Part shown: positions 2,640 to 55,576 of the stretch, piece after piece | How the letters are laid out: each line of letters starts with the position of its first letter | Position numbering within the stretch: the first letter of the stretch is position 1 | DNA from: Dendrobates tinctorius | Lineage: Eukaryota | Direction of reading: 5' to 3' | DNA length: 64,000 bases | NCBI RefSeq assembly: GCF_039654945.1 | Contig: NW_027361696.1 | Coordinates: 50,034,001-50,098,000 of the forward strand | Notes under the pieces: model-generated | The model's database searches: none | Seen by the model: the letters and a program-made list of their open reading frames with translations, nothing else | Told to the model about the DNA's origin: nothing | Made by a program: the position numbers and the translations under genes

Positions 2640-5600
2640 GTAAGCACTTACTACTTGGATCTAGCTTTTCTATTAACCCTCTTACTCCTTCACCATGTTT
2701 ACATATGCCCTCACAGTGTTTGCTCCATTAATCCTCACTCTCCTTCGCTATCCCCAAACACCAGCACCCTCTAACCAAATAATCATCTCCCCTTCCCTCT
2801 TTCCTCCCCACCTGACCTCCTCTGCTGACCTGCTCCTCAACCTCAAATCTGTCCTAATGAAACATAAAACAAGCCGCCCACTCTCCTCCCATCTGCTCTC
2901 CCTTTCTCTGCTTCTCCTCACTGCTGGCGACATATCTCCCAATCCTTGACCTCTATAGCTCATACCCCCATTACTACTCCTTCCTATCTAATAAGAACTA
3001 CCGCCATTTTTCCAACGTAAAACCCGTACCATTGACACCCACCCCCCTACTCCCTCTCTCTGGAGCACTTTGGAATGCCCGCTCCATCTGCAATAAGCTT
3101 CATGTGATTCATGACCTCTTTCTCTCTCGCAATCTTGCCTTTCTCGGCCTCACAGAAACCTGGCTGACACCCTCTGACACCGCCTCCCCTGCTGCACTGT
3201 ATTACGGAAGCCTCCACTTCACCCACACTCATCGCCCTGGCAACAGACAAGGTGGAGGAGTGGGTCTTCTTTCTTCCAACTGCACCTTCAAACCAATCCC
3301 ACCTCTTCCCTCCCTAATCCTCCCCTCTTTTGAAGTCAACTCTGTCCACATCTACTCTCCCTCCAACCTCCAAGTGGCCGTCATATACCGACCTCCAGGC
3401 CCGACCACTGCCTTCACTGACCAATTCTCTACCTGGCTTCTTCACTTTTTTTCAGCTGACATCCCCACTATCATCATGGGTGACTTCAACACCCCACTGA
3501 TACCCTTCAGTCAGCAGCCTCCAAACTCTTATCCCTTACTTCATCCTTTGGACTTAGTCAGTGGTCCTCCTCAGCCACCCACACAGATGGACATACATTA
3601 GACCTGGTCTTCACCCACCTCTGCTCTCTTTCTAACTTCACCACCTCCCCTCTCCCTCTATCCGACCACCATCTATTCACTTTCTCATCCCTGTCCCCCT
3701 CTCCTGTCACACATGTCCAGCAACATGCGCACCCCCGCAGAAACCTTGCACATCTAGACACCCACACGCTCTGTGACCCTATTCTACCACTGGCATCCAT
3801 ATCCTCACTCCACGACACAGACAGTGCCACTGCTTTCTACAATGCCACTCTCGCATCAGCCATTGACATGGTTGCCCATCTCGTTTATGGCAGAATGCAA
3901 CAAACCAACAGACAACCCTGGCACAATAACACCACTAAAAAGCTCCGGCAAGTGTCCAGGATTGCAGAGCGGCGTTGGAAGAAAACAAATTCACAAGACG
4001 ACTTCACTGCATTCAAACAGGCAACACTCACTTTCAAATCTGCCCTCAACTCTGCTAAACAGGCCTACTTCACAACCCTTGTATCTTCCCTTTCCTACAA
4101 CCCCAAGCAGTTATTCAAAACTTTTAACTCCCTCCACCGCAGACCACTGCCCCCTCCAACCTCCCTCATCTCTGCTGAGGACTTTGGTCGATCTTATTTT
4201 TGAAGTGTGTGGCAAACAAGGCAAGTCTTCATTGTTCAACCACCACAACCCCTTTGTATACCAGACCAATGCTCAAACCACATAACCTCCCTCTCCAACA
4301 TCACTGAAGGGGAGCTTGATTGTCTCCTCTCCAAATAGCACCTCACAACCTGTGCACTCGACCCCATTGCATCCCACCTCCTCCCCAACCTCACCACCAC
4401 ACTTATCCCATCTGTAACCTACCTCTTCAACCTATCACTAACTTCCAGTACCTTCCCTTCTGCTTTTAAACATGCCACAATAATGCCTATTCTTAAAAAG
4501 CCAACCCTCGACCCAACCGCTATGTCCAGCTATCGCCCAATATCGCTGCTCCCATTCGCTTCCAAACTCCTGGAGCTGCACCTCCATGCTGAACTTTCTT
4601 CCCACCTCTCATCTAAAGCCCCTTCTCACATAGCGAGATCGCCAGCGATCTCGCTAAAGCGTCACCGATTTTGTGACGCAACAGCGATCTCGCTAGCGAT
4701 CTCGCTACATGTGACACGTACCTGCGACCGCCCCCCCCCCGCTGGATATCGCTGATCACGCTCGAAGGTCCTGGGCCATTTCTTCCTCGTTGGCGTCCCC
4801 CTGGCACCAACTAGCGACGCATGGATGCAGGCGGAAGTCATCATTGCTGCCGTGTGACAGGTAAGAGCGACCGCCGTTGGATCTCTTATGCTGCTGCGTC
4901 GCTGGTGAGATCTACCTGTTTGTCAGCTCACTAGCGACCATTTAGCGATGCACCAGTGATCCTGACCGGGTCGTATCGTTGTCGGGATCGCTGTTGCATC
5001 ACTAAATGTAACGGGACCCTAACTTGCTCTTTGGAGATTGTCAATCTGGTTTCTACCCCCATCACTCCACTGAGACAGCCCTGACCAAAATTACTAACGA
5101 CCTACTTACAGCCAAAGCAAAAAGACATTACTCTATAGTCCTGCTTCTAGACCTGTCCTCTGCTTTTGGCACAGGACCACTACCTCCTACTATAGATCCT
5201 CTCCTCCTTTGGCATCAAAGACCTCGCCCTTTCCTGAATCTCCTCATACCTTTCCAACTGCACAGTCAGCGTCTCCCACTCCCACACTACCTCATCATCC
5301 CACCCTCTCTCTGTTGGAGTCCCCCAAAGCTCTGTTCTAGGACCCCTACTCTTCTCAATCTATACACTTGGCCTGGGGCAACTCAAAGTCCTACGGATTC
5401 CAGTACTACCTTTATGCTGATGACACTCAAATCTACCTCTCTGGCCAAGACATCACCTCTCTGCTGTCCAGAATCCTGGAGTGTATATCAGCCATATCCT
5501 CCTTCTCCTCTCGCTTCCTCAAGCTCAGTGTGGACAAATCTGAACTCATCATCTTTCCTTCATCTCACAGATCTTCCTTACCGATCTATCACAATTAACG

Positions 5601-10856: not shown

Positions 10857-11970
10857 CTAAGCAGGTGACTGTGCTCTTGATAGTACTCTCTGGGCATCCA
10901 CCGCCATAGCCTCTAAACATCGGCTCAGCACCAGGTAGCTAGCATGAAAAGCGATCCCTCCAGTGGCTAAGGGACCTAGAAGAGGAAATTTATGCAAAAA
11001 AACTCCTGCCACTTCCAACCCAATTCCTGTAGCTGAACCTAATAATTTCTGAACGAGCTCACGCGTCACTCCCTTTCCTGCAGGACTCTGGATCTCTAAC
11101 ATGAACTTTGGAACCGGCACCCCTGACTTATGGGAAAGGTTGGCCAGCGAATCACCATCCAGACCCAGTTCTTGGCGATAAGTGTCCAGACGGGCAGTGA
11201 GCAAGGATACATCGCATGCAATGGCAACTCCAGGGATAGGAACGCTAGCCACCAAGCTGGAGAGAAGTGCCACCTTCCAGACTTCTTGAGAAAGTGCTTC
11301 CTTTTTCTTCTCAATGACTTCAGCTGACAGATTTGGGAGAGAGAGCATGAACGCTCGCAATTTGTGACTGGGCAGATTCTTCTCCAGATAACCCAATAAT
11401 CTATGAAATTCTGGCCCTGGTAGTTTAGCTGGAGATAGTACAAAAACTTCGTTTTCTCTTGGTTCTGGTGGCATCTCATCATCTTCACAATCTTGGATGA
11501 AGACGTTCTTCTTCCCTTCCTTCTTTAGCTCGAGAACAAGAGACCTGTAACTACTGGAAGCCTCCTGCCATGGTGTGAGGAACAGCAGAGTGAAGTCGTA
11601 TCGACTCATGTGAACGCTCTCCAGATACTTTTTTGGCTGAGACTCAAGACTTTCCATTCCAGGAAGATCCCACAAGCTGGCTTTGGGATATTTAAGACTG
11701 GCATACTCAATTGGGTTTTCTGGATTTCCACCGTGAGCCGAACCATCCTCTCCATCCTTCAGGCCACGAAAGGAATTCAAGATAGAGTGACGGAAGCCGG
11801 GGTTGCCCCCCATTAACGCCAGATCAAAACGGGTGTCCAAAAGGGAGTCCAAACTGCTCTGGATAAATCTGACCATCTCGGAGATCCCTCCTCGTTCTAG
11901 TGCAGACTGTAGTTCAGCTATTTCTTCATAGCCGATCACTTCATAACCCTGCTGTGCAAGACACAAGGCT
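10857..11970 (-). CDS. irgq: Immunity-related GTPase Q (IRGQ) orthologue, last coding exon (LIR1, second degenerate IRG G-domain, C-terminal helical domain)
   Basis: Acceptor ttcttttcctacAG|A at 11971-72, phase 2, joins the upstream exon in frame (1761 nt total, 586 aa). Segments AQQGYEVIGYEEIAEL..GGISE, LWDLPG, WKVALLSSLVASVPIPGVAIACDVSLL and ATGGIAFHASYLVL..AMAVDAQRVL align by eye with recalled human IRGQ (AQDGFEVLG, WRPALLASL..PLPGLGWACDVALL, ATGGLGY..MRADAEAVL). Confidence 0.9.
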
Positions 11971-13296
11971 CTGTAGGAAAAGAACATGACATGATAAACT
12001 AAGACACCAGATGTGTGTTTCTGCTCATTGTAGTTCCTGTTACAGTATTGTTTCTACACTGTACCAACTAATGGATGTCATCTCCATAAGGCAGAAATCA
12101 CATATCCACAATTGGATTCAAGGGGAATTGGACATACCGTACAAGGGACAGATTTATATTTCTGTAGGATAAACTTCAGGTTTGGGCTAAAACAGCTGCA
12201 TCAAAAACTGGTCTTGTGATTTCAGCCCTGTAGGGGTATTCTCAAGTTTGGAAGTTATCCTTTATCTGTAGAAAAGAGGATATCTTCATGATCGCTGAGA
12301 TCCCAAGTGATCAAGAGACCCAGTGCTCTGAAGTACCCAGTGTGAGAATAGAGCAGTGGTCGATCATGAGCATCCATTATTAATAGGACCAACGGAAATA
12401 GCCGAGAGCTGCGGGCAGCTGATCTTTGGCAGTGGGCATGATCGACCACTGTTCCGTTCACATGGGATACTTTAGAGCCCTGGTTCTGAAATGAAGGGAA
12501 GTTATGGATAGGGGATAACTTGGGAATAAAGAGCAACAATTTTTATTTTTTTTTTTAATATGCTCTCCCTTCATTACACATCATTTAGCCCTGCAAACCT
12601 CCTCCTATCTGCCAGCATCCACCGCATCTCTTCTGATTAGAAAGCGCAGCGTGATGTCATGTGAGAGTTGTGCTGCAGGACCTACTAATCAGAAGAGGCT
12701 CCAAGAATACAGCAGATATGAGGAGGTTCGCAGAGCTCTGGTCCACCAGACACAGACTTCCAGAAAATAATTTTTGCTCCTCTCTTCTAAACACAGATAT
12801 AAAAACAAAAAAAAATGACAAAAAAATTCCATCCATTCCTCCCCTACTAGCCTTCATATCTTTGATATTTTTTGTCTCATTTTACAAACAAAAATGAGAA
12901 ATCTAGAAATAAAATGTTCTCTGTGTGTCAAAGGAACTCAGTCATGCCCCCCGTTATCCTCCAGTTATGTGTGTGACTGTAATGAAGCTGGCTCCACTAG
13001 GAGAGGAAATGGTAAAGCCTCTCCCCCTGTTAAAGCCAGTTACTATCCAAGACAGTAAATGAGTAAATGATGAAAAAGTGGCAAGAGCATCCAAAATGGA
13101 AAGTGCCAAGTCTGCCAATAAATGAGCTCAGCGTTGCATACAATAACAGACACAAGGAGCAGTATCAGAGACTCGGCGCTCCCCTTACCAAAGTTTTTTT
13201 TCTCATGTTTTCCCATTTGAGTTTTCTATAGAGGTTTCCATTAAACCGCGGTCTACTCCTACATTGTTTGTGCTCAAAGGCCAAGTTTCTACCCAC

Positions 13297-13943
13297 CTGC
13301 CAAGTTCTTTTGAGGTCTTTTCTATTTTGGCCTTCAACGATGGCGCATCTAGTTTGTATGGCTCGAAACCAGACATCAGGAAAAGTGGTAAAGCTTCTTT
13401 CTTTGCAACATCATTAAATGGCATGAGGACAACCTTCCGCAATGCTGACAATACTTCTACCCTGGAGTACTCTTCCTTCATCCTCCTCCTTAAGGTGTGC
13501 AAATCGCAGTCTACCTTGGTGCGCACCAAGCAGAGTCTTTTCCCCTGAGAAAGGGCACTGAGAGCCAAGTCAACATGGGCTTGCGTGAACTGAGCATCAG
13601 TGACCAAAAGCAGAAGGTCGGCCTCGGTTATCCACTTTTCCGGAGATCCATCATCTAGTGGGAGCTCCCAGAAGGTTAGACCAGGGTGGGAAGGGTGAAG
13701 GTACAGCAATGGACCATCAGGCTTATTAGGATGGAGAAATGCTGCTCTCGAATTTTGGCTATTCTCATTGAAGCCAAGAAGTGCCTGTATCAAAACTGTT
13801 TTGCCAACACCTGGTCCTCCTGCAATGGCCACGGAAAAGTCCCAACAGTCTTCAGGAGGAGGATCCTCATGGTGTCCTTCATTTTCATCTTCCAGTTGCT
13901 TGAATTCAACCTCCTTCAGGCTCAACTCACTAAATGTCTCCAT
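13297..13943 (-). CDS. irgq: IRGQ orthologue, first coding exon (acidic N-terminus and N-terminal P-loop G-domain)
   Basis: Acceptor ttttgcAG|GTTATG (exon starts 13946, ATG 13943); donor GGCAG|GTGGGT at 13296; P-loop GGPGVGKT, G4 RTKVD, G5-like SGFE; PGLTFWELP..KWITEADLLLLV resembles human IRGQ PGLFLGELS..PWAAEANVLVLV. Confidence 0.88.
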
Positions 13944-14608
13944 AACCTGCAAAAGATGGAAAAATTGCAAAATATGAAGAATTATGGCCCGACTAGTTAT
14001 AGCATAATTTTTTGGTCTAGTTTTTAGGCCTTTTTTGGCTGTTTTTCCTCATTCTTATTTTCATTTGTATGCTTTTTTTTTAATCTATGTTATACGTGTT
14101 CACCTGTTTTAGGTTAATTATTATTGACAAGGTTTCTCCATCTTGTCCATTTTTTCAGTGAGCAGAAATCAGACTGCACTCAAATGACATCTGAGTACAG
14201 TCCAATGTTTCCAACGGACTCACTGACTTGCATGGTTGAGTGCGATCCGAATATTGAATCAAACTGGGGCATGCAGAGATTTGTCCTATGGACCCTGAGA
14301 CCAACTTTGGTTTGAGCGCAATCTAATGTTTTGTTTGATTGCACTAGGACCGAAATTCCTCTTGTGTACACCTGCCCTTAAAGGGGTATTCTGGTCAAAG
14401 CAAGTTATCACTAATTCAGTTGGCTGGCGATATCAGCTGAATAGGTATGCATACAACCACTGGGACCTCCACTGATGCCATCAGTTCTCTCATAATCACA
14501 ACACTACAGCCAGGAGGGGGTCGAACCTCAAGCCTGGACAAGCCCTTTAAGAGGCACACACCTCTTAATGAAAATGGTGCATCTTACCCCAGCACACTTC
14601 ATCTAGAT

Positions 14609-14804
14609 CAGCGATTCCTAAACTCCAGTCCTCACGGCCCCTAACAGATCATGTTTTGAGGATTACCCCAGTATTGGACAAGTGAGAGAACCTGCAGCAA
14701 TTTCTCATGCCTTGATAATAATTCCATCACCTGTGCAATTCTAAGGAAATCCTGAAAACATGATCCTTTGGGTCATCGTGAGGACTAGCGATTTGGAAAC
14801 GCTG
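14609..14804. mobile_element. hAT (Charlie-like) MITE
   Basis: CAG...CTG termini, long TIRs, 8-bp duplication ATCTAGAT/ACCTAGAT. Same family as 22100..22276. Confidence 0.75.
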
Positions 14805-15329
14805 ACCTAGATCTAGTCCCATCGAGGATCCCTGCACTCTTCCAGAGAAGGCCACCGATACACTAAAGGTTTACATAAACTTTGCCCCTTTCAACCAAGA
14901 AGTCCCAGAAAATGCACGACAGTTGGCAACTTTAGAAACCACGGTCCGTCTACAGACTGAAATGTGGACTTATGAGCCCGGCCTCATTAAGGTGAAGCAC
15001 AACTCCCCAGCTGTTAAAAACTACAGCTCTTATCATGCTCCGACAGCTATGGGATGCTAGGTGTTGTAGTCCTTCAACAACTGAAGGGGCCAGAGGCTAT
15101 TAGGCCATGCTGAATTCAGCAGCTGGAGCGCCACAGATTGGCGATCATTCAAGGGGCACATTTCATTGATGCAGCCGAAAAGGAACCCAAAGAGTAAGGG
15201 GGTCCATTTCTACCTCTAAAACAGGTGGAATTGTGCATTTTAGTGAGCTACAGGACTGCAAGGGGCCCATATATTGTTCTTACACAGGGGCCCTTTTTTG
15301 TCTGTGTCCACCAGTGCAATCATTACAAC

Positions 15330-15634
15330 TAGTGATGAGCTGTGCGATAAGGCGTTAACTGAGCATGCTCGGGTGTTAACTGGGTGTCTTTGGAGTGCTC
15401 GAATAATATGTTCGAGTCCCCGCGGCTGCATGTCTCACGCCTGTTCAATAGTCGTAACACATGCAGAGATTGTCTATTTGTTAGGCAGCCCCCGCATGTG
15501 TTGTGGCTGTTGAACAGCCAAGAGGCATGCAGCAACGGGGACTCCAACATATTAGTCGAGCATGCCAAAGACACTCAGCCAGCACATGAGCATGCTCGGA
15601 TAACACCTTATCCAACCACGTTCGCTCTTCACTA
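15330..15634. mobile_element. hAT MITE (TAGTGATGAGC termini)
   Basis: Perfect 8-bp duplication ATTACAAC; TIR TAGTGATGAGC...GCTCTTCACTA; palindromic interior. Confidence 0.85.
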
Positions 15635-15877
15635 ATTACAACAGGGAATATAAAGAGAGGTAGCAGACCTTAGGTCGTGTTCACACAGAGTAAATGCTGC
15701 ATTTTTTTTCCGCTGCATTTATTAGTTCAAGCACCTCAGATGTGATTTCACGAAAACTCGTGAACTGTGGTATAAAGACTGTCTTTTTTGCTATGTATTT
15801 TTCCTCTATTGTAGAACAAAAGGCGTATAAAAAAAAGCATAATTGCGTTAAGTGCAGAATCAAAGATAAACCTGCAC

Positions 15878-16136
15878 TAGTGATGAGCGCGCATCCCTGA
15901 AGTGTTATCCGAGCACGCTCATGTCCTAATCGAGTATTTTCGGCGTGCTAAAAAAAACGCTCGAGTCCCCGTGGCTGCATGTCTCGCGGCTGTTCGACAG
16001 GCAATTCCTGCTTGTGTTGCAGCAGTCGAACAACCGCGAGACATGCAGCCGTGGGGACTCGAGCACCCTGAAAATACTTGATTAGGACACGAGCGTGCTT
16101 GGATAACACCTCATCAGAGACGCCCGCTCATCACTG
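15878..16136. mobile_element. hAT MITE (TAGTGATGAGCG termini)
   Basis: TIR TAGTGATGAGCG...CGCTCATCACTG; same family as 15330..15634 and 31588..31784; degraded TSD. Confidence 0.75.
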
Positions 16137-16229
16137 ATCTCTACCAAAAATGCATCAAATAAAGAGGAAAACACTTAAATGCAGCAAAACCACAGAGATT
16201 GATTTTTAGTATTTTGGAGCAAAATCAAA

Positions 16230-16775
16230 ACGCAGTCGAAATAGAAAACCCCGCAGCATTTATGCTACATGTGCATAATAATCCAAATCTAGGGATAGGA
16301 AAGGAGGCAGTGCAGGGATTAGGTCAGGATCAGATGGGAAGTGGGGAAGAAATGGAAACCATGTTACAAAAGGAGGGTGGAAGGAAACAATGTATTTCTG
16401 TAAATATTTGTGGTTACAGTGTATCGCATCGGGGGACATAATGGTCATCAGACAAATGTGGCATGCAGGGGGGATAGAGATGGGGTTGGGGGTCTCCTTT
16501 GCTCACTGGTTTCAGGTGCAGCAGATCTCCTGGTGGAAGGAGCCAGCCAGTGGATGTCAGGGCCTGGCCTTGCTCTATCAGCAGCTGATTCAGGGTGTAT
16601 ATATGTATCTCTCCTCCTCCTTCCTCTCACATGTCCCTGTTTTCCTTCCTCCTCTCTGCAGTGACGCTGCTATATCCCCTCCCTGTCCAGCGCTGTATAC
16701 AGCACAGCGGCCTGCCAGCTGTCATCTACTACTCCCCCTGTCTATTGTGTAGCATCCATACACCAGGCAAGTATA
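16230..16775. promoter_or_regulatory. Putative bidirectional promoter and non-coding first exons of the two IRGQ genes
   Basis: Both ATGs sit 2-3 nt after a splice acceptor, so non-coding first exons must lie between the genes. Candidate minus-strand donor CCA|GTGAGC (16506) and plus-strand GC-type donor CAG|GCAAGT (16767) face outward about 260 bp apart. GAAANNGAAA motifs at 16238-47 and 16349-58. Confidence 0.5.
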
Positions 16776-17238
16776 TATTTATGCGTCCTTTCAGCCTACC
16801 CTTTTGCCCGCCATCCTGACCCTCTGTGTGTAGTTCTGCCCCTTTGTCGTGCAACCCCATTGTTGCCTCGTATTGTTGTCATGTTTGCATTTTGCTATGG
16901 CCTAGAAGTGAAGCTGGCAGCAACGCTGGGGTGGCAGCAGGGGCACAAACGCATGATACCATCAGATAGGATAGCCCGAAATTAATCCTATACTAAAGCA
17001 CATGACAAGTTTTGCCAGGGCATATTTGCAGAAAGTAGAGAATTGCCACTTTGCCACAGCAGATATCCCCTTCCCCGTGTCTCTCAACGACCGCTTTAGC
17101 AAAAGTCCTTATAAATCTTTCATGCGATGCTATTTTAGAGATATGTATGTCAGTGCTTTCTCGTGGTGCTTACTCGTTGGGATCTTTTGTTCATTTTTTC
17201 AATCTCTTGTTTTAACCTCTTTTGCAAAAAAAACAGAA

Positions 17239-17882
17239 ATGGCCGACGTTGAGATACCTGAAGACGTGGCATCCGGACCACCTGCACTTGAGACACCACC
17301 TCCAGAATCTCTACACTTCACCATTGCCATCATCGGACCAAGAGGTTCTGGAAAGACCACACTAGTCCGATCTCTTTGTAACCACACGGAACAATTCGGT
17401 CCTGGTTTCCTAGACTCCTACTTTAGGGATGAGAGTGAAGAACATGGGGTTGAGCGGCACACTTATCCATCTTTACCTAATGTTACTCTCCTTGATTGCC
17501 CGGGGTATAAACCTGGTGACTCTGCTACGGTATATGTAGACAGCATCAAGCCAGACATGGTGCACTGCCTGGTGGTAACGTTTGGGGAGACCATCACTGA
17601 TGCAGACTTGCAGATACTGGGGGCCATAAAACACTTAGGGAAGCCCGTCTGTATGGTGCAAACGCATATAGACCTCACTATGCACACAGAAAAGAGACAG
17701 CAGGGGAAGGGTTACTGGAGAGGGCAAACACTGATGGGCATGAGGGGTAAAGTGCAGGAACAGCTGGGTGGGCATGGGATGCCAGGGTCCAGTATATTTC
17801 TGGTGTCGGGTCTAGAACCACAAAACTACGACTTCCAAGGAATGGTGGATTATATTGAGAAGGAAATTCTGCAATGGAAGAG
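17239..17882 (+). CDS. IRGQ-like paralogue (IRG family), first coding exon: N-terminal G-domain
   Basis: Acceptor aaacAG|AAATG; G1 GPRGSGKTT, IRG-type YPSLPNVTLLDCPG (G3 DxxG), G4 variant QTHID, FLVSG; donor AAGAG|GTGAGA (phase 2). Confidence 0.85.
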
Positions 17883-18170
17883 GTGAGAGATGGCGATCGA
17901 TGCGACACTTTACATTTGGAGACTGTATATAAAGTTAGAATCTTATAGCCATTAACCCTTTGTAAATTGAAGCCGACCTCTGTGATTGAGATATATGTTG
18001 TATGAGGGGGTTCACCATGTAATTCATGGACTCGTGAGCCGGAGTCACCCTCAATCACATCCATATGGCCTGTTTGAAATTTTGGCATGCAGAGAAGCAG
18101 GAGGTTAAACTAAAGGTACACTTATCCCGACAGTGGCTGTATTATATCATTCCCTTTAGGGTTAGTGTAA

Positions 18171-18350
18171 GGCCGGGGTAATACTTGCAAGTGCAATGCG
18201 AGAAACTTCCCTCAATTCCCAGCACTGCCGCCGGCACTCGAGATCGGAGTGTGCTGCTGCATGTCGCAGCTGAATGCTCCTGTCCGAACCGCCGGTGGTA
18301 GTGCCAGGTATTGAGGCAAGAGACTTGCACTCGCAAGTGTGACCCCAGCC
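18171..18350. mobile_element. Harbinger-type MITE in intron of IRGQ-like gene
   Basis: TIR GGCCGGGGTAATACTTGCAAGTGCAA / TTGCACTCGCAAGTGTGACCCCAGCC; TAA on the left. Confidence 0.6.
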
Positions 18351-18879
18351 TATGGCAAAAATACGCCATTGCTTCATGGCGCAGGCGCGGACCTCCATCC
18401 ACACAGCAGGGGTGCCAGCTGTGTTATACATCTGGCACCGAAGAGTGACCGTAATCTTTCACTGTATACTGCCATACTGAAGTATCATAATATAGAGAGC
18501 AAGCGACCAAACTCAACTAAAAAAATGAAATGTAGAAAAAAAATACATAGAAAATTTGAATCTCCTTTTTTTGTAGATAATATTAAAAAAAAATTTTGGT
18601 ATTGCCGTCTCTGTAAAACATGACTACTTTCTCCCGGAAACACACCTGTTCATAGGTTGTGAGTGGTATTGCAGATCACGTTTTAATAATGTCTAATTAT
18701 GAACAGGGTAAATAGGACATCATTTTGAGGGGCAGAAAGTGGGAAAGTCTTGTTTGTCTTTATATGAATGTGAATTACCCACTGGATACAATCCAATCGA
18801 TTCCTCTTTATAAAATGCAGTCTGATAAAGCGCCAATGAGACCCCGGCCTTAAAGTAACTTGTCTATTTTTGTTTTCAG

Positions 18880-19924
18880 GCCCGTCCCTTTTACTACTGA
18901 ACCTCACTGTCAAGAACTAGTGTCAGTATTTGAGGTCCAATGTGACCAAGAAGGACTTTCAGAGTTCTGCTCTCTCCTCAGCATCTTCTTAGATAACCCC
19001 CCGCCTGTGTCCGCCGTGGTGGGTGTGACTGGCAGCGATAAAGAAGCGACGGTCTCCGCTCTCTGTGAGCCCCCACTTTCTGGTCTTGTAGTGAAGCCGC
19101 TCCCTGGGCCAGGGACACCCCCCATGTCTGTGGAGCAGTATCTACAGAACTTGCAGTCGGAGGCCTGTGATGTCTACCTGATTCTAGGCTCGGGGATGGA
19201 CAACAGCTCCCGCGCTATACTGGTTGAAGCCTTGGTGGCAGCTGGCAAACACTGTATGCTGATCGGCGGAGAGGGAGATAGGAGACACAAACATGATGCC
19301 AATGGGCAAGAGGGGGGCAGTAAAAAATGCCATGCTGGCACTGACCTACCTGGACTTAGGGTAGCATTAGAGAAGGGAGCTCCACAGTTGGTCAGGGAAA
19401 GGCTCCTGCATGCCATTCCCACCATAATTGTCCAGCTGGTAAGAAGAGAGCGGAGAAGACTTATGATGGGCATATATGATGTCTCTTTAGATGTATGTGC
19501 CAAGTCAAGTCAAGGGCATTTGCAAGATGCCCTGGCCACCCTTTCCTCCAAGTTGTCGTCGTTACGCGCCCGCTTTGGTTTGGATGAAGATTCCCTGACT
19601 CTAATATCACAAGTGACAGGGTGCAGTCCTGAGGACTTGCGTGCGGAAATTCAGTGCCCCCTGACACAGGATCCAACCGAGGACCAACTGCTTCAACTGA
19701 CGTCGCAACCACTTTCTCTGACGGAGCTCGTCTGGAGTTACGTACCCCGCTGGGGCGGAGGAGAAGAGTCTTCCTCTAAACTGTCTGCAGACCGTACCTA
19801 CCATCTACTGGTGGAGGCCGTATGGGGCATGGCGGAGGATGCGGAGAGGGTACTGCTACATGGCTGTACGAATCAAAAGGTGGCAAAAGAAAGGACTGCC
19901 TTCTGCCACTGGCCTTGCGTGTGA
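18880..19924 (+). CDS. IRGQ-like paralogue, last coding exon (highly eroded second G-domain and IRG helical C-terminus)
   Basis: Acceptor ttttgttttcAG|G, phase 2, joins in frame (1689 nt, 562 aa); IRG C-terminal signatures RARFGLDEDSL, LRAEIQCP, MAEDAERVL. Confidence 0.85.
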
Positions 19925-36819: not shown

Positions 36820-38530
36820 TCAGTACAAGAATATAACTACTATAATACTGCCCCTATGTACAAGAATATAACTACTATAATACTGCCCCTATGTACAATA
36901 TAACTACTATAATACTGCCCCTTATATACAATAATATACAGTGGGTACGGAAAGTATTCAGACCCCTTTAAATGTTTCACTCTTTGTTTCATTGCAGCCA
37001 TTTGGTAAATTCAAAAAAGTTCATTTTTTTCTCATTAATGTACACCCTGCACCCCATCTTGACTGAAAAAAAACACATTTTTGCAAATTTATTAAAAAAA
37101 GAAAAACTGAAATATCACATGGTCGTAAGTATTCAGACCCTTTGCTCAGTATTGAGTAGAAGCACCCTTTTTAGCTAGTACAGCCATGAATCTATTTGGG
37201 AATGATGCAACAAGTTTTTCACACCTGGATTTGGGTATCGTCTGCCATTCTTCCTTGCAGATCCTCTCCAGTTCTGTCAGGTTAGATCGTGAATGTTGGT
37301 GGATAGCCTGGTCTCTCCAGAGATTCTCAATTGGGTTAAGGTCTGGGTTCTGGCTGGGCCAGTCAAAAATTGTCACAGAGTTGTTCCAAAGCCACTCCTT
37401 TGTTATTTTAGCTGTGTGCTTAGGCTCATTCTTTTGTTGGAAGGTGAACCTTCTGCTAAGTCTGAGGTCCAGAGCACTCTGGAAGAGGTTTTCATCCAGG
37501 ATATCTCTGTACTTGGCCGCATTCATGTTTCCTTTATTGGCAACCAGTAGTCCTATCCCTTCATCTGAAAAACACCCCCATAGCATGATGCTGACACCAC
37601 CATGTTTCACTGTTGGGATTGTATTGGGCAGATGATGAGCAGTGCCTGGTTTCTTCGTCTCATCAGGTCAGAGAATCTTATTTCTCATCGTCTGTGAGTC
37701 CTTCATGTGTTTTTTAGCAAACTCTATGCGGGCTTTCATATGTCTTGCACTGAGGAGAGTCCTTTGGGCCACTCTGCCATAAAGGCCCGACTGGTGGAGG
37801 GTTGCAGTGAACTTTGTGGAACTTTCTCCCATCTTCCTACTGCGTCTCTGGAGCGCTCAGCCAGAGTGATCTTGGAGTTTTTATTTACCTCTCTCTCACC
37901 AAGGCTCTTCTCCCACGATTGCTCAGTTTGGCTGGACGGCCAGGTTTAGGAAGACTTTTGGTGGTCCCAAACTTCTTTCATTTAAGGATTATGGAGGCCA
38001 CTGTGCTCTTAGGAACCTTGAGTACTGCATAAATTATTTTGTAACCTTGGCCAGATCTGTGCCTTGCCACAATTCTGTCTCTGAGCTCCTTGGCCAGTTC
38101 CTTTGACCTCATGATTCTCATTTAGTCTGACATGCACTGTGAGGTCTTATATAGACAGGTGTGTGCCTTTACTAATCAAGACCTATGAGTTTAATTAAAC
38201 ACAGCTGGACTCCAGTGAAGGAGTAGAACCATCTCAAGGAGGATCACAAGGAAATAGGCAGCATGTGACTTAAATATGAGTGTCTGAGCAAAGGGTCTTT
38301 TTTTAATAAATTTGTAAAAGTTTCTACATTTCTGTTTTGTTTAGTTTTTTTTCAGTCAAGATGGGGTGCAGAGTGTAGATTAATGAGAAAAAAATGAACT
38401 TTTTTGAATTTACCAAATGGCTGCAATGAAACAGAGAGAAAAACTTTATAGGGGTCTGAATACTTTACGTACCCACTGTAACTACTATAATACTGCCCCT
38501 ATGTACAAGAATATAACTAGTATTATACTG
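36820..38530. repeat. About 35-bp minisatellite (ATAACTACTATAATACTGCCCCTATGTACAAGAAT) split by a Tc1 insertion
   Basis: Units visible at 36820-36938 and 38479-38530. Confidence 0.8.
36939..38478 (-). mobile_element. Tc1-like DNA transposon, defective transposase
   Basis: TA|CAGTGGGTACGGAAAGTATTCAGACCCC...CCCACTG|TA; minus-strand KHGGVSIMLWGCF, QQKNEPKH (degenerate QDND), DLNPIENLW; frameshifts and deletion. Confidence 0.93.
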
Positions 38531-46194: not shown

Positions 46195-48190
46195 CAACCA
46201 GTTATGTCACCTGTTCATCTTACTCCTGTACAACCAGTGATGTCACTGACGCATCTTACTACTGTACAACCAGTGATGTCACTGGCCCATCTTGCTACTG
46301 TACAACCAGTGATGTCACTGGCCCATCTTACTACTGTACAACTAGTAATGTCACTGGCCCATCTTACTACTGTACAACTAGTAATGTCACTGGCCCATCT
46401 TACTCCTGTACAACCAGTGATGTCACTGGCCCATCTTACTCCTGTACAACCAGTGATATCACCTGTCCATCTTACTCCTGTACAACCAGTGATGTCACAG
46501 GCCCATCTTGCTACTGTACAGCTAGTGATGTCACTGGCCCATCTTACTACTGTACAACCAGTGATGTCACTGGCCCATCTTACTACTGTACAACTAGTGA
46601 TGTCACTGGCCCATCTTACTACTGTACAACTAGTGATGTCACTGGCCCATCTTGCTACTGTACAGCTAGTGATGTCACTGGCCCATCTTACTACTGTACA
46701 ACCAGTGATGTCACTGGCCCATCTTACTACTGTACAACTAGTGATGTCACTGGCCCATCTTGCTACTGTACAACTAGTGATGTCACTGGCCCATCATACA
46801 ACTAGTACATCTGTACAACTAGTGATGTCACTGGCCCATCTTACTACTGTACAACTAGTGATGTCACTGGCCCATCTTACTACTGTACAAATAGTGATGT
46901 CACTGGCCCATCTTACTACTGTACAACTAGTGATGTCACTGGCGCATCTTACTCCTGTACAACCAGTGATGTCACTGGCCCATCTTACTACTGTACAACT
47001 AGTGATGTCACTGGCCCATCTTGCTACTGTACAACCAGTGATGTCACTGGCCCATCTTGCTACTGTACAACCAGTGATGTCACTGGCCCATCTTACTACT
47101 GTACAACTAGTGATGTCACTGGCCCATCTTACAACTAGTACTAGTACATCTGTACAACTAGTGATGTCACTGGCCCATCTTACTACTGTACAAATAGTGA
47201 TGTCACTGGCCCATCTTACTACTGTACAAATAGTGATGTCACTGGCCCATCTTCCTACTGTACAACTAGTGATGTCACTGGCGCATCTTACTCCTGTACA
47301 ACCAGTGATGTCACTGGCCCATTTTACTACTGTACAACCAGTGATGTCACTGGCCCATCTTACTACTGTACAACCAGTGATGTCACTGGCCCATCTTACT
47401 ACTGTACAACCAGTGATGTCACTGGCCCATCTTACTACTGTACAACCAGTGATGTCACTGGCCCATCTTACTCCTGTACAGCCAGTGATGTCACTGGCCC
47501 ATCTTGCTACTGTACAACCAGTGATGTCACTGGCCCATCTTACTACTGTACAGCTAGTGATGTCACTGGCCCATCTTACTCCTGTACAACCAGTGATGTC
47601 ACTGGCCCAGCTTACTACTATACAACTAGTGATGTCACTGGCCCATCTTACTCCTGTACAACCAGTGATGTCACTGGCCCATCTTACTACTATACAACTA
47701 GTGATGTCACTGGCCCATCTTACTACTGTACAACTAGTGATGTCACTGGCCCATCTTACTACTGTACAACTAGTGATGTCACTGGCCCATCTTACTACTA
47801 TACAACTAGTGATGTCACTGGCCCATCTTACTACTGTACAACTAGTGATGTCACTGGCCCATCTTACTACTATACAACTAGTGATGTCACTGGCCCATCT
47901 TACTACTGTACAACTAGTGATGTCACTGGCCCATCTTACTACTGTACAACTAGTGATGTCACTGGCGTATCTTACTACTGTACAACCAGTGATGTCACTG
48001 GCCCATCTTACTACTGTACAACTAGTGATGTCACTGGCCCATCTTACTCCTGTACGACCAGTGATGTTACCTGCTCTTCTTTCTCCTGTACAACCAGTGA
48101 TGTCACCTGTCCATCTTACTCTTGTACAACCAGTGATGTCACTTGCCCATCTAACTCCTGTACGATCAGTGATGCCACCTGTCCATCTAC
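46195..48190. repeat. 39-bp tandem array (about 50 units; GTGATGTCACTGGCCCATCTTACTACTGTACAAC(C/T)A), open as a 664-aa ORF on the + strand
   Basis: Unit = 13 codons (VMSLAHLTTVQ(P/L)V register); two expanded units of +6 and +12 nt keep the frame. Confidence 0.95.
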
Positions 48191-48384
48191 AAAGTTGAAA
48201 GGTTGTGTTGAATGTTGATGACACCACCATTAATTGTGCTCCTCAAGAAAGATGGCTGCCGGCATCCATAACTGGATTCAGGATTATATAGACTGGATTA
48301 TTGTTATTTTGTAGGCCTGTGATGGCAACTATGGCACACCTTTATGCATCCAAGACTAACCAGTCCTTGTTTTTTTTTTTGTAG

Positions 48385-49854: not shown

Positions 49855-50825
49855 ACCCTTTGGAGGACAGTTCAGGCTCCCACATGGCCCCTGAGGACTC
49901 CCCACCTCCTCCGTGCCCCGACTGTGGACGGACTTTCCAAACTCTACGCGCACACAAACTCCACAGGCGCAACCATGCCGCCGATCTCTCTTACACCTGC
50001 AAGGACTGCGACGTGGCCCGAGCTGGGGCTACTGAGGGAAGTGAGAAGCCTTATTCTTGCTCTGAATGTGGCCGCCGCTTCTGCTGGCTTTTGGCCTTGC
50101 ACAGTCATCACGAACAGCACACCGGCCAACGTGGCTACCAGTGCTCACAGTGTGGAAAGCAGTTGTCCAACCATCCAGCCTTCCGCAGACACCAGCAAGC
50201 TCATCGCAAGGATCGAGTTTGCGTTTGGTGCGGGAAAGCGTTCAACTGCTCGGCCAAACTATCCCGTCACATACGTATCCACACTGGAGAAAGGCCATAC
50301 CAATGCCCCGAGTGCCCACAAGCGTTCACACAACTAGAGACTCTGCGAGTCCACCAGTGGGTGCACGAAGATCCTAAGCCCTTCCAATGTCAGGACTGTG
50401 GGCGAAGGTTTCATGTCCAACGCACCTTCGAAAAGCACAGAAACTTGCATATCTCCCGGAAGTCTCACGCTTGCCCCATCTGTGGCAAGACTTTCTTCTT
50501 CTCATCTCGCTACAAGCGCCATCTTCGGATTCATACAGGTGAAAGACCCTTCCAGTGCCAACAGTGCGGAAAAAGCTTTAACCAGCGTTCCAACTACCAG
50601 AGGCATCGGGCTGTCCATGCCGGCAAGAGACCGTTCCCTTGTAACCTGTGCGAGAAAAGTTTCAGCCAAGCGTCCAACTACCGACGCCATCTTCAGACCC
50701 ATCGGAAGGAGAGGGGCAGGTGGGAAGAGAAAGCAGAGTATAAATGTATCGAGTGTGGGGTACGCTTCACAGAAGAAGGAGGGCTCCATGAGCACTATAT
50801 ACAGCATGCCAGGGGGGAGCTATGA
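49855..50825 (+). CDS. znf576: ZNF576-like C2H2 zinc finger protein (10 intact fingers and 1 broken); first in-exon ATG at 49884
   Basis: C2H2 arrays with TGERP linkers; the terminal finger ..GLHEHYIQHARGEL* matches the recalled human ZNF576 end GLHQHYIRHARGEL; acceptor tgcAG|ACC at 49853-54; synteny with IRGQ as in mammals. Confidence 0.82.
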
Positions 50826-53945: not shown

Positions 53946-55576
53946 CAGTGCCTTTCGAAAGTATTCGGCTCCCTGGAACTTTTCAACCTTTTCCCCACAT
54001 ATCATGCTTCAAACATAAAGATACCAAATGTACATTTTTTGGTGAAGAATCAACAACAAGTGGAACACAATTGTGAAGTTGAACGAAATGTATTGGTTAT
54101 TTTAAATTTTTGTGGAAATTCAAAAACTAAAAAGTGGGATGTGCAATATTATTTGGCCCCTTTAATTTAATAATTTGTTGCCCCACCTTTTGCTGCGATT
54201 ACAGCTGCAAGTCACTTGGGGTATGTCTATATCAGTTTTGTACATCGAGAGACTGAAATTCTTGCCCATTCTTCCTTGGCAAACAGCTCGAGCTCAGTGA
54301 GGTTTGATGGAGATTGTTTGTGAACAGCAGTTTTCAGCTCTTTCCACAGATTCTCGATTGGATTCAGGTCTGGACTTTGACTTGGCCATTCTAACACCTG
54401 GATACCTTGATTTGTGAACCATTCCACTGTAGATTTTGCTTTCTGTTTGGGATCATTGTCTTGTTCGAAGACAAATCTCTGTCCCAGTCTCAGGTCTTTT
54501 GCAGACTCCTTCAGGTTTTCTTCAAGAATGGTCCTGTATTTGGCTCCATCCACCTTCCCATCAATTTTAACCATCTTCCCTGTCCCTGCTGAAGAAAAGC
54601 AGGCCCAAACCATGATGCTGCCACCACCATGTTTGACAGTGAGGATGGTGTGTTCAGGGTGATGAGCTGTGTTACCTTTACGCCAAACATATCGTTTGGC
54701 ATTGTTGCCAAAAAGTTCGATTATGGTTTCATCTGACCAGAGCACCTTCTTCCACATGTTTGGTGTGTCTCCCAGGTGGCTTGTTGCAAACTTTAAATGA
54801 CACTTTTCATGGATATCTTTTAGAAATGGCTTTCTTCTTGCCACTCTTCCATAAAGGCCAGATTTGTGCAGTGTACGACTGATTGTTGTCCTATGGACAG
54901 ACTGTCCCACCTCAGCTGTAGATCTCTGCAGTTCATCCAGAGTGATCATGGGCCTCTTGGCTTAATCTCTGATCAGTCTTCTCCTTGTTTGAGATGAAAG
55001 TTTAGAGGGATGGCCGGGTCTTGGTACATTTGCAGTGTTATGATACTCCATCCATTTCAATATGATCGCTTGCACAGTGCTCCTTGGGATGTTTAAATTT
55101 TTGGAAATCATTTTGTATCTAAATCCGGCTTTAAACTTCTCCACAACAGTATCACGGACCTGCCTGTTGTGTTCCTTGGTCTTCATGATGCTCTCTGTGC
55201 TTCAAACAGAACCCTGAGACTATCACAGAGCAGGTGCATTTATACGGAGACTTGATTACACACAGCTGGATTATATTTATCATCATTAGTCATTTAGGAC
55301 AACATTGGATTATTCAGAGATCCACAATGAACTTCTGGAATGAGTTTGCTGCACTGAAAGTAAAGGGGCCAAATAATATTGCACGCCCCACTTTTCAGTT
55401 TTCGAATTTCCCCAAAAATTTAAAATAACCAATAAATTTCGTTCAACTTCACAATTGTGTGCCACTTGTTGTTGATTCTTCACCAAAAACTTACATTTGG
55501 AATCCTTATGTTTGAAGCATCATATATGAGAAAAGGTTGAAAGTTCCAGGGAGCCGATTAATTTCACAAGGCACTG
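53946..55576 (-). mobile_element. Full-length Tc1 (DD34E) transposon; transposase 55186..~54167 disabled by in-frame stops
   Basis: TA|CAGTGCCTT...AAGGCACTG|TA with about 200-bp IRs; WSDE, QDND, NPIENLW; nonsense codons at 54962-64, 54227-29 and near 54212. Confidence 0.95.

What the first reader, a model, noticed from the sequence alone, without database searches (positions are those of the whole stretch)
10857..19924. Head-to-head pair of tandem-G-domain IRGQ genes
Seen: two divergently oriented genes (586 and 562 aa). Each has an ATG just after an acceptor, a 644-647-nt G-domain exon, an identical phase-2 intron inside an Arg codon (AG|A, AG|G), and a second eroded G-domain plus IRG helical tail. 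Known: mammals have one IRGQ next to ZNF576, and it is an ATG8-binding autophagy receptor. Inference: the minus gene is the orthologue and the plus gene is an old inverted duplicate, occupying the head-to-head position ZNF576 has in human. The two may be co-regulated and work as a pair, as GKS and GMS IRGs do in mouse.
Basis: partly seen in the sequence, partly recalled or inferred. Interest (0 to 1): 0.8.

Follow-up and report, generated by a model that had tools for sequence, protein, structure and literature searches.

The report
Frog IRGQ and its head-to-head paralogue
Two real, expressed frog genes sit head to head: one is the counterpart of the human autophagy receptor IRGQ, and the other is an uncharacterised sister gene at least as old as the lungfish-tetrapod split and not found in mammals here.

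Summary
Gene A (minus, 586 aa) and gene B (plus, 562 aa) each have a G-domain exon, a phase-2 GT-AG intron inside an Arg codon, and a long exon with a degenerate IRG unit. All four coding pieces pass the Pfam IIGP cut-off.

Spliced RNA contigs from three runs show junction 17882/18880, the donor at 13297, and non-coding first exons that abut or overlap at 16507-16766.

A is the IRGQ counterpart:
- It lies beside a PINLYP-like gene in alligator and Xenopus.
- Its N-domain profile hits the solved human IRGQ N-domain; B's does not.
- Its YEVI aligns with human LIR1.

B is a sister paralogue. Both lineages occur in lungfish, amphibians and reptiles. They are head to head in two frogs, a lizard and an alligator, and share the intron column.

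New points:
- The duplication predates the lungfish-tetrapod split.
- Non-anuran A and B keep intact GTPase motifs in the second domain, so its erosion is anuran-wide and parallel in the two genes.
- B is under strong purifying selection (dN/dS 0.09).
- Anuran B has an invariant C-terminal CHWPCV tail.

Working as a physical pair is untested. Both genes already exist as automatic RefSeq models.

The parts
10857..11970 (-). Gene A (frog IRGQ counterpart), last exon. Encodes residues 216(third base)-586: linker with LIR1-like YEVI, degenerate second G domain (GGNPGFRH, DLPG kept, G4 deleted) and the IRG helical domain. Includes the stop.
   Evidence: ORF and translation; Pfam IIGP 118.6 bits; IRG structures E 1e-27; motif table
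11934..11945 (-). YEVI, residues 225-228 of A. This is the position equivalent to human IRGQ LIR1 (aa 186-189).
   Evidence: Translation. P0001:32-233 aligns colinearly to 8q6q_C 2-190. LIR1 position from PMC13172515. [FY][ED]x[IF] is kept in all 28 family-A proteins aligned. The stretch just before it, 222-229, which includes the first LIR residue, has pLDDT below 50.
11971..13296 (-). Gene A coding intron, GT-AG, phase 2 in Arg216, 1326 bases.
   Evidence: RNA contig pieces start exactly at 13297 in X1, X2 and X5.
13297..13946 (-). Gene A exon with the ATG (13943). N-terminal G domain with G1 GGPGVGKT (13797-13820), G3 replaced by WELP, and G4 TKVD.
   Evidence: Pfam IIGP 67 bits; 8q6q_C E 7e-6; contig pieces 13297-13944
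13947..16506 (-). Gene A 5' UTR intron (GT-AG on the minus strand). Holds hairpin repeats (14596-14817, 15346-16113) and an ISRE-like site (16349-16360).
   Evidence: Joint 13944>16505, CT..AC with cut +2, in four runs; repeats; ISRE
16507..16589 (-). Gene A non-coding first exon, minimum extent. One contig of run X5 runs on to 16763.
   Evidence: Contig pieces 16505-16589 (X1), 16505-16573 (X2) and 16505-16763 (X5)
16590..16661 (.). Shared 5' region between the two first exons, with TATATAT at 16598-16604. Either a bidirectional promoter or an overlap of the two transcription units.
16662..16766 (+). Gene B non-coding exon. It is preceded by a strong acceptor (polypyrimidine tract then CAG) and followed by a GC-AG intron.
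   Evidence: Contig pieces 16660-16763 joined to 17234 (shift of 3 allowed) in X1, X2 and X5; sequence
17237..17882 (+). Gene B exon with the ATG (17239). N-terminal G domain with G1 GPRGSGKT (17335-17358), G3 DCPG and G4 degenerate (QTHID).
   Evidence: Pfam IIGP 53 bits; IRG structures E 2e-11
17883..18879 (+). Gene B coding intron, GT-AG, phase 2 in Arg215, 997 bases.
   Evidence: Joint 17880>18878, GT..AG with cut +2, in X1, X2 and X5
18880..19924 (+). Gene B last exon. Strongly reduced second G domain (GVTGSDKE, PLPG, no G4; two deletions relative to newt, lizard and lungfish B), the IRG helical domain, and an anuran-only tail ending CHWPCV (19904-19921). Includes the stop.
   Evidence: Pfam IIGP 44.8 bits; AlphaFold model pLDDT 77.5; Foldseek IRG hits
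49860..50825 (+). C2H2 zinc-finger ORF downstream of B on the same strand; a synteny marker. Its C-terminus is 55% identical to the zinc-finger gene that follows B in alligator.
   Evidence: Pfam zf-C2H2; tblastn against L001, E 3e-15. Orthology to ZNF576 was not tested.

Best explanation
What is shown: the locus holds two functional, spliced, co-expressed genes of the immunity-related GTPase (IRG) family. They descend from one ancestral two-exon gene. Exon 1 of that gene encoded a G domain without the helical domain. The long exon encoded a complete IRG unit. The gene was duplicated in inverted orientation before lungfish and tetrapods diverged.

Gene A is the frog counterpart of mammalian IRGQ. 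Gene B is its sister paralogue. B is kept head to head with A in frogs, a lizard and an alligator, and no mammalian B-type protein was found here.

In the frog stem lineage the second G domain of both genes lost its nucleotide-binding motifs. Newt, caecilian, lungfish, lizard, tuatara and turtle proteins keep them. Both frog proteins are therefore 'quasi-GTPases' that became so independently of mammalian IRGQ.

What is inferred about mechanism:
- A most likely acts as an ATG8-binding adaptor or autophagy receptor, as human IRGQ does. It would use the conserved YEVI in the flexible linker after the N-terminal G domain.
- B lacks that motif. It most likely acts as a non-catalytic partner or parallel scaffold, made from the same 5' control region. 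Its frog-specific cysteine tail may give it a different location.
For: Gene structure and expression:
- Gene models and splice sites.
- Spliced RNA contigs for both genes in three runs. First exons are 70 bases apart (X1, X2) or continuous (X5).
- IIGP domain in all four coding pieces. IRG fold.

Age and relatedness of the two lineages:
- Family A is found in frogs, caecilians, salamanders, lungfish, squamates, tuatara, turtles and alligator. Family B is found in frogs, newt, lizards, tuatara, alligator and lungfish.
- G-domain tree: A N-domains form one clade (98/91) and B N-domains one clade (100/98). The two join at 97/69.
- The intron is in the same phase and column in A and B across frog and lizard, and in alligator B.
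- Head-to-head order is seen in the window, X. tropicalis, Elgaria, alligator and Anomaloglossus.

A as the IRGQ counterpart:
- Synteny with PINLYP-like, zinc-finger and Ig-domain genes.
- Human IRGQ N-domain chain 8q6q_C is hit by the A profile at 36 bits and is not listed by the B profile.
- LIR1 aligns and is conserved across the family.

Motifs and constraint:
- Motif erosion is restricted to anurans.
- dN/dS is 0.09 for B overall, 0.05 for its reduced second domain, and 0.11 for A exon 1.
Against: - No full-length mammalian IRGQ sequence could be brought into a tree. The orthology call rests on synteny, one 192-residue solved chain, a motif and database names.
- The second (complete) IRG units of A and B are not resolved as sisters. 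An origin by exon shuffling rather than whole-gene duplication is therefore not excluded.
- The language-model feature search places both A and B equally near the mammalian IRGQ cluster, at 0.97 and 0.96.
- The conserved [FY][ED]x[IF] could be structural rather than an ATG8-binding motif.
- No equivalent of human LIR2 was noticed on inspection; the position was not aligned.
- Contigs are unstranded and cannot place transcription starts. One run suggests a further upstream exon of B.
- Absence of B from mammals and birds is an absence among the 150 best cluster representatives. It is not a genome search.
Confidence: 0.8

Rival explanations
1. Gene B, not gene A, is the true counterpart of mammalian IRGQ. 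Under this reading A is a reptile/amphibian-type tandem IRG that mammals lost.
For: NCBI names most A orthologues 'interferon-inducible GTPase 5-like' rather than IRGQ. Both A and B lie near the mammalian IRGQ cluster in the feature search. Mammalian IRGQ is so divergent that it was not among the top hits of any search.
Against: - The human IRGQ N-domain (8q6q_C) is hit by A (28.9 bits with the single sequence, 36 bits with the profile). It is not hit by B at E up to 1, nor listed in the B profile's top 60.
- LIR1 aligns to A's YEVI and is deleted in anuran B.
- A, not B, lies beside the PINLYP-like gene, in the orientation IRGQ has relative to the zinc-finger gene.
- Salamander, caecilian and lungfish A are named IRGQ(-like) by NCBI, and X. 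tropicalis A is named IRGQ by UniRef.
Confidence: 0.07
2. A and B are an obligate heterodimer in frogs, a regulatory pair analogous to mouse GKS/GMS IRGs. Their partly complementary surviving motifs would make one composite nucleotide-dependent switch.
For: - Abutting or overlapping first exons, and co-occurrence in the same RNA runs.
- Head-to-head linkage kept from frogs to alligator.
- In the N-domains, A keeps G1 and G4 but lacks G3. B keeps G1 and G3 but lacks G4.
- Both second domains were eroded in the same stem lineage.
- Bekpen et al. 2005 proposed that quasi-IRGs regulate IRGs as heterodimers (PMC1297648).
Against: - There is no interaction evidence of any kind.
- Neither protein has the GxxxxGMS P-loop that defines the GMS regulators.
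- Divergent gene pairs are often kept together with no protein interaction.
- Human IRGQ works without a B partner.
- Contig depth cannot measure co-regulation.
Confidence: 0.15
3. The resemblance of A and B comes from independent fusions of a G-domain exon to different full-length IRG genes. It would then not come from duplication of one tandem ancestor.
For: The complete (second) units of A and B do not group together in the G-domain tree. A's second unit sits nearer coelacanth and frog tandem IRGs, while B's is unresolved. Proteins made of a G domain alone followed by a full IRG unit also occur in bowfin, cod, shark, a clam and a coral. The architecture is therefore common.
Against: The intron has the same phase and alignment column in both genes. 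The N-domains are nearest relatives at 97/69. The genes are adjacent and inverted in every genome examined. The lack of resolution in the second units is weakly supported (47/75, 33/61), so it does not contradict a single origin.
Confidence: 0.1

Closest known systems
Mammalian IRGQ (FKSG27), an ATG8-binding autophagy receptor with an N-terminal G domain (PDB 8Q6Q), LIR1 at aa 186-189 and LIR2 at aa 421-424
   Same: Gene A shares these features:
- An N-terminal G domain followed by an IRG-homologous unit without GTP-binding motifs.
- An aromatic-x-x-aliphatic motif at the aligned LIR1 position.
- The long second unit on one exon.
- A neighbourhood of PINLYP-like and C2H2 zinc-finger genes.
- Linkage to the IRGC region. 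An earlier scan note places an IRG cluster at the SMG9-IRGC locus 2.4 Mb away.
   Different: - Sequence similarity to the human N-domain is weak (21-36 bits).
- Frog A keeps an intact P-loop and TKVD in the N-domain, and DLPG in the second domain.
- No LIR2 equivalent was noticed on inspection.
- Its loss of motifs happened independently in the frog stem lineage, because reptile and salamander orthologues keep them.
- It has a head-to-head paralogue, for which no mammalian counterpart was found here.
Zebrafish irgg-irgq1 tandem transcript (Bekpen et al. 2005, PMC1297648)
   Same: A C-terminally truncated IRG G domain is joined in one protein to a quasi-GTPase IRG unit. A cavefish 'irgq1' protein scores slightly higher with the B profile than with the A profile.
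   Different: Orthology is unresolved: the cavefish irgq1 domains fall near the root or on a weakly supported branch. Bekpen et al. already argued that fish and mammalian IRGQ are not one clade.
Mouse tandem IRGs (Irgb2-b1, Irgb5-b4)
   Same: Two IRG G domains in one polypeptide.
   Different: The mouse proteins join two complete 47-kDa units. Here the first unit is a G domain alone, with no helical domain, and the second unit is degenerate.
Mouse GKS/GMS regulatory IRG pairs
   Same: The idea of one IRG-family protein regulating another. In this locus the genes are also linked.
   Different: There is no GMS P-loop in either protein, no evidence of interaction, and no shown interferon induction. 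Only one ISRE-like site is present, at 16349-16360.

Membership tests
IRG / p47 GTPase family (Pfam IIGP, PF05049) | Significant match to the IIGP profile above the curated cut-off | tested here: met
   All four coding pieces scored 67.4, 118.6, 53.3 and 44.8 bits against a cut-off of 24.
IRG / p47 GTPase family (Pfam IIGP, PF05049) | IRG fold: G domain plus N- and C-terminal helical domain | tested here: met
   Sequence hits to Irgb10, Irga6, Irgb6 and GM4951 structures. The AlphaFold model of the B orthologue has a Foldseek top hit of IRG structures at E 2e-9.
IRG / p47 GTPase family (Pfam IIGP, PF05049) | Canonical G1 (GxxxxGK[ST]), G3 (DxxG) and G4 ([NT]KxD) motifs | tested here: not met
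   No domain has all three motifs.
- A N-domain: G1 and G4 present, G3 is WELP.
- B N-domain: G1 and G3 present, G4 is THID.
- A second domain: only DLPG is left.
- B second domain: none is left.
. The proteins are members by descent but not canonical GTPases.
IRGQ orthologue group (gene A) | Conserved neighbourhood: PINLYP/XRCC1 on the tail side, a C2H2 zinc-finger gene on the head side | tested here: met
   Alligator locus L001 and X. tropicalis locus L003. The window's zinc-finger ORF matches the alligator one. The mammalian neighbourhood comes from PMC6946968 and general knowledge. The window itself does not reach the PINLYP side.
IRGQ orthologue group (gene A) | N-terminal G domain closer to the IRGQ N-domain than the paralogue's is | tested here: met
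   8q6q_C: 28.9 bits against the A exon and 36.1 bits against the A profile. It is absent from the B lists. The margin is modest.
IRGQ orthologue group (gene A) | LIR1 directly after the N-terminal G domain | tested here: met
   YEVI at residues 225-228 aligns to human 186-189. The motif is conserved in the 28 family-A proteins aligned. Binding itself was not tested.
IRGQ orthologue group (gene A) | LIR2 in a disordered loop of the second unit | not tested
   No clear aromatic-x-x-aliphatic motif was noticed in the acidic loop of frog A on inspection. No alignment to human residues 421-424 was possible without the human sequence.
IRGQ orthologue group (gene A) | Grouping with mammalian IRGQ in a phylogeny of the full protein | not testable with these tools
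   Mammalian IRGQ did not appear in the listed results of any search. It could not be handed to scripts.
IRGQ orthologue group (gene B) | Same features as for A | tested here: not met
   There is no hit to 8q6q_C. The LIR1 position is deleted in anurans. B lies on the zinc-finger side, not the PINLYP side. B is a paralogue of the lineage.
GKS/GMS regulatory pair | One partner with a GxxxxGMS P-loop | tested here: not met
   Both N-domains have GK[TS]: GGPGVGKT and GPRGSGKT.
GKS/GMS regulatory pair | Interferon-inducible promoter elements | tested here: inconclusive
   One ISRE-like GAAATGGAAACC lies at 16349-16360, and there is no GAS site in 16300-16950. No induction data exist.
GKS/GMS regulatory pair | Physical interaction of the two proteins | not testable with these tools
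   Only monomer predictions were available.

The most novel reading that the evidence does not exclude
In frogs the two paralogues have become an obligate two-protein module. A would supply the ATG8-binding LIR. B would supply membrane or cargo targeting through its frog-specific cysteine tail. Their complementary surviving N-domain motifs (A lacks G3, B lacks G4) would form one composite nucleotide switch across a G-domain interface. Under this reading, the solitary mammalian IRGQ is a reduced remnant of an ancestral paired, GTP-regulated autophagy adaptor.
Probability: 0.12. Interest if true: 0.75.

Novelty: new member of a known kind. Interest (0 to 1): 0.5.

Why it matters
IRGQ was only recently given a function in humans: an autophagy receptor for misfolded MHC class I and a hub for ATG8 lipidation. 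Its origin has been unclear because the mammalian protein is too divergent even for the Pfam IRG profile.

This locus and its relatives give IRGQ a readable ancestry:
- IRGQ descends from a two-exon 'G domain + full IRG' gene.
- Its second domain still carries intact GTPase motifs in reptiles, salamanders, caecilians and lungfish.
- Its LIR1 position is conserved back to lungfish.
- It has an uncharacterised, strongly constrained sister gene that stays head to head with it, and for which no mammalian counterpart turned up here.

This yields several testable questions in Xenopus, which has both genes:
- Was ancestral IRGQ a GTP-regulated adaptor?
- Is ATG8 binding ancient?
- What does the lost partner do?

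The result is an evolutionary and annotation advance inside a known family. It is not a new kind of system.

Tried and rejected
- Obtaining full-length mammalian IRGQ. It was absent from the word-index searches with A exon 2 and with a ten-species family-A profile. It was also absent from the 150 best hits of the exhaustive profile search. Candidates of about the right length (P0120, P0084, P0172) turned out to be other tandem IRGs, and P0131 and P0138 are short family-A N-domain proteins. No tree contains mammalian IRGQ.
- Naming the zinc-finger gene. The Atlas feature search gave only generic C2H2 clusters. The exact-sequence cluster look-up did not find it. ZNF576 orthology is therefore untested.
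- Lungfish locus. The gene spans more than 100 kb and no DNA was returned.
- Atlas feature search to separate A from B. Both score 0.96-0.97 to the IRGQ cluster, so it does not discriminate.
- First literature search with 'amphibian'. It was uninformative. No paper was found that describes an IRGQ paralogue in amphibians or reptiles, but most subscription literature is not searched.
- Rejected: pseudogene status for either gene (dN/dS 0.05-0.13).
- Rejected: B as a recent frog-specific duplicate (a lungfish orthologue exists).
- Rejected: a mouse-style tandem of two complete IRG units (the first unit lacks the helical domain).

Full report
THE OBSERVATION

Listing ORFs and reading the splice sites reproduced every number in the finding.

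Gene A lies on the minus strand:
- Its ATG is at 13943, three bases after an acceptor.
- The exon ends at 13297 before GTGGGT.
- The next exon starts at 11970 after CTACAG and runs to the stop at 10857.
- The product is 586 aa. Arg216 is split after its second base.

Gene B lies on the plus strand:
- Its ATG is at 17239, two bases after an acceptor.
- The exon ends at 17882 before GTGAGA.
- The next exon starts at 18880 after TTTCAG and runs to the stop at 19924.
- The product is 562 aa. Arg215 is split after its second base.

Each of the four coding pieces passes the Pfam IIGP cut-off. Each also matches solved IRG structures.

RNA EVIDENCE

I laid the contigs of four public runs on 13250-19249. 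The runs are only guessed to be RNA. However, contigs that skip GT..AG introns can only come from spliced RNA.

Gene B:
- The junction 17882/18880 is present in three runs (two organism codes, two studies).
- A non-coding exon at about 16662-16766 is joined through a GC-AG intron to 17237.

Gene A:
- Contig pieces start exactly at 13297, the predicted donor.
- They join 13946 to a non-coding exon that starts at 16507.

The 5' ends:
- In two runs A's first exon is seen up to 16589 and B's exon from 16660.
- In a third run one contig is continuous over 16505-16763.
- The two 5' ends are therefore at most about 70 bases apart, or they overlap.
- 16662 follows a strong acceptor. One run also joins it to an exon ending at 14991 (AAG|GTGAAG). 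B may therefore start further upstream, inside A's first intron. This rests on one contig with a 29-base side.

The acceptor at 11970 lay outside the 6000 bases I was allowed to lay. It is supported by three things: the ORF, the 588-590 aa orthologue models, and the identical intron in X. tropicalis A.

WHO HAS THESE GENES

Word-index searches found orthologues of each gene throughout frogs. An exhaustive profile search followed by name look-ups extended both families.

- Family A occurs in frogs, caecilians, squamates, tuatara, turtles and alligator. It also occurs in salamanders and lungfish, where an extra N-terminal G domain gives about 800 aa.
- Family B occurs in frogs, a newt, lizards, tuatara, alligators and lungfish.
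- No mammalian or bird protein was among the B-like representatives. This is an absence in a list of 150, not a genome search.
- Both genes already exist as automatic gene models. A is usually named 'interferon-inducible GTPase 5-like', or 'IRGQ(-like)' in salamanders, a caecilian, lungfish and UniRef X. tropicalis. B is named 'uncharacterized protein LOC...'.
- I found no paper describing B.

ONE ANCESTRAL TANDEM GENE, DUPLICATED EARLY

- The coding intron is phase 2 at the same alignment column in window A, window B, X. tropicalis A, Elgaria A, Elgaria B and alligator B.
- I built a careful maximum-likelihood tree of 89 G domains. The N-domains of A form a clade (98/91) and those of B form a clade (100/98). 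The two join at 97/69, with four long-branch intruders.
- The complete second units of A (95/98) and of B (94/17) each hold together, but are not resolved as sisters.
- Both clades include lungfish, so the duplication predates the lungfish-tetrapod split.
- Proteins with a G domain alone followed by a full IRG unit also occur in bowfin, cod, shark, a clam and a coral.

WHICH GENE IS IRGQ

I could not obtain a full-length mammalian IRGQ sequence from any tool. The case rests on four independent lines.

1. Synteny. The alligator order is PINLYP-like(-), A(-), B(+), C2H2 ZNF(+), ZNF(-), Ig-domain gene. X. tropicalis also has a UPAR_LY6 gene on A's tail side. The window's zinc-finger ORF at 49860-50825 matches the alligator one next to B. 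Mammals have XRCC1, IRGQ and ZNF576 together, followed by CADM4 and PLAUR (PMC6946968). The strand arrangement in human is from my own knowledge.
2. The solved human IRGQ N-domain (8q6q_C). The frog A exon hits it at 28.9 bits and a family-A profile at 36 bits. The B exon at E up to 1 and the top 60 of the B profile do not list it.
3. LIR1. An A orthologue aligns colinearly with that chain, residues 32-233 against 2-190. This puts frog YEVI on human LIR1 at residues 186-189 (PMC13172515). The motif [FY][ED]x[IF] is kept in all 28 family-A proteins aligned, from lungfish to frogs. The corresponding position is deleted in anuran B.
4. Database names.

My recollection of the human C-terminal sequence also resembles A more than B. 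That is a lead, not a test.

WHAT THE FROG PROTEINS LOOK LIKE

- N-domain of A: it keeps G1 (GGPGVGKT) and G4 (TKVD) but has WELP in place of DxxG.
- N-domain of B: it keeps G1 (GPRGSGKT) and G3 (DCPG) but has THID in place of [NT]KxD.
- Second domain of frog A: G1 is GGNPGFRH and the G4 region is deleted.
- Second domain of frog B: the motifs read GVTGSDKE and PLPG, with no G4 and two deletions.
- Newt, caecilian, lungfish, lizard and tuatara orthologues of both genes keep GxxxxGKS, DLPG and [TN]KxD. Turtle A keeps G1 and G3 but has AKVD at G4.
- The erosion is therefore shared by all frogs sampled, parallel in the two genes, and independent of the erosion in mammalian IRGQ.
- All 20 frog B proteins share a 15-residue C-terminal extension ending C[HR]WPC[VI]. 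Non-frog B proteins lack it.

Structure and constraint:
- AlphaFold models of close orthologues are fairly confident. B (P0022) has pLDDT 77.5 and pTM 0.76. A (P0001) has pLDDT 78.0 and pTM 0.58.
- In the A model, residues 222-229 have low confidence. This stretch ends on the first residue of the LIR-like motif (229-232).
- Foldseek returns IRG structures first.
- dN/dS against Anomaloglossus is 0.09 for B overall. It is 0.05 for B's reduced second domain and 0.11 for A exon 1.

MECHANISM

Shown: two constrained, spliced genes, co-detected in the same runs, with adjoining 5' ends.

Inferred: A is an ATG8-binding adaptor like human IRGQ. B is a non-catalytic partner or parallel scaffold.

The pair model is attractive for three reasons: the conserved head-to-head linkage, the partly complementary N-domain motifs, and the simultaneous erosion of both second domains. 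It has no direct support, and neither protein has a GMS P-loop.

One ISRE-like site, GAAATGGAAACC, lies at 16349-16360, and there is no GAS site. Interferon control is open.

VERDICT

Three corrections apply:
- The duplication is much older than an amphibian event.
- The erosion of the second domain is frog-specific.
- B is a paralogue of the IRGQ lineage, not an IRGQ.

This is an undescribed member lineage of a known family. It is useful for understanding where IRGQ came from, and it is testable in Xenopus.

Noticed in passing
window 19904-19921; alignment A6: All 20 frog B proteins end in a 15-residue extension with an invariant C[HR]WPC[VI]. Newt, lizard, tuatara, alligator and lungfish B lack it. 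It is not a CaaX box. It could be a lipidation or metal-binding site.
   Followed up: partly
window 14896-14991 and 16662: In run X19 one contig joins an exon ending at 14991 (AAG|GTGAAG) to 16662. In X1 and X2 the B contig has 19 unplaced bases upstream of 16660. B may therefore start inside A's first intron, which would make the two transcription units overlap by more than 1.6 kb.
   Followed up: partly
window 16349-16360: ISRE-like GAAATGGAAACC: one of only two GAAANNGAAA cores in the 64 kb window. It lies about 300 bases upstream of B's exon at 16662 and inside A's first intron.
   Followed up: partly
window 14596-14817 and 15346-16113: Hairpin (MITE-like) repeats in A's first intron. The longest has arms of 131 bases, 79% complementary, 5 bases apart. 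Depth is very high and there are many strand-switch joints in the RNA runs, as expected for a dispersed repeat.
   Followed up: partly
P0044, P0209, P0222, P0045 (salamander and lungfish family A): Salamander and lungfish A proteins are about 800-830 aa and carry a third, extra N-terminal G domain. In the tree it groups with a shark N-type domain, not with the A N-domain.
   Followed up: partly
alignment A6; P0058, P0205, P0061, P0113: Among non-anuran B proteins, lizard, tuatara and lungfish keep an intact second G domain but have lost the P-loop lysine in the N-domain (GAGVS, GSGVS). Alligator B has lost it too (GPCRAGTS) and also has altered motifs in its second domain (GEPGSGHT, DLSD, TQVD). 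Frogs show the reverse of the lizard pattern. Newt B keeps both P-loops, but its N-domain G4 reads SQVD.
   Followed up: partly
P0156 (Mercenaria clam), P0168 (Dendronephthya coral): Invertebrate proteins of about 565-606 aa have the same 'G domain + full IRG unit' layout, even though IRGs are usually described as a vertebrate family.
   Followed up: no
window 3032-3601, 37146-37610 and 54227-54949: Transposon remnants: a LINE-type endonuclease ORF (Exo_endo_phos, E 8e-10) and two Tc1/mariner transposase remnants (DDE_3, HTH_Tnp_Tc3_2).
   Followed up: yes
window 46204-48230: A long tandem repeat reads as an open frame on both strands (an 11-residue unit such as VQPVMSLAHLT). It is almost certainly a minisatellite and not a gene.
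   Followed up: no
L001 (alligator), 12961-14516 and 16244-18365: Two C2H2 zinc-finger genes and an Ig-domain gene follow B in alligator. This is the position where mammals have ZNF576, ZNF428 and CADM4. Their names were not verified.
   Followed up: no
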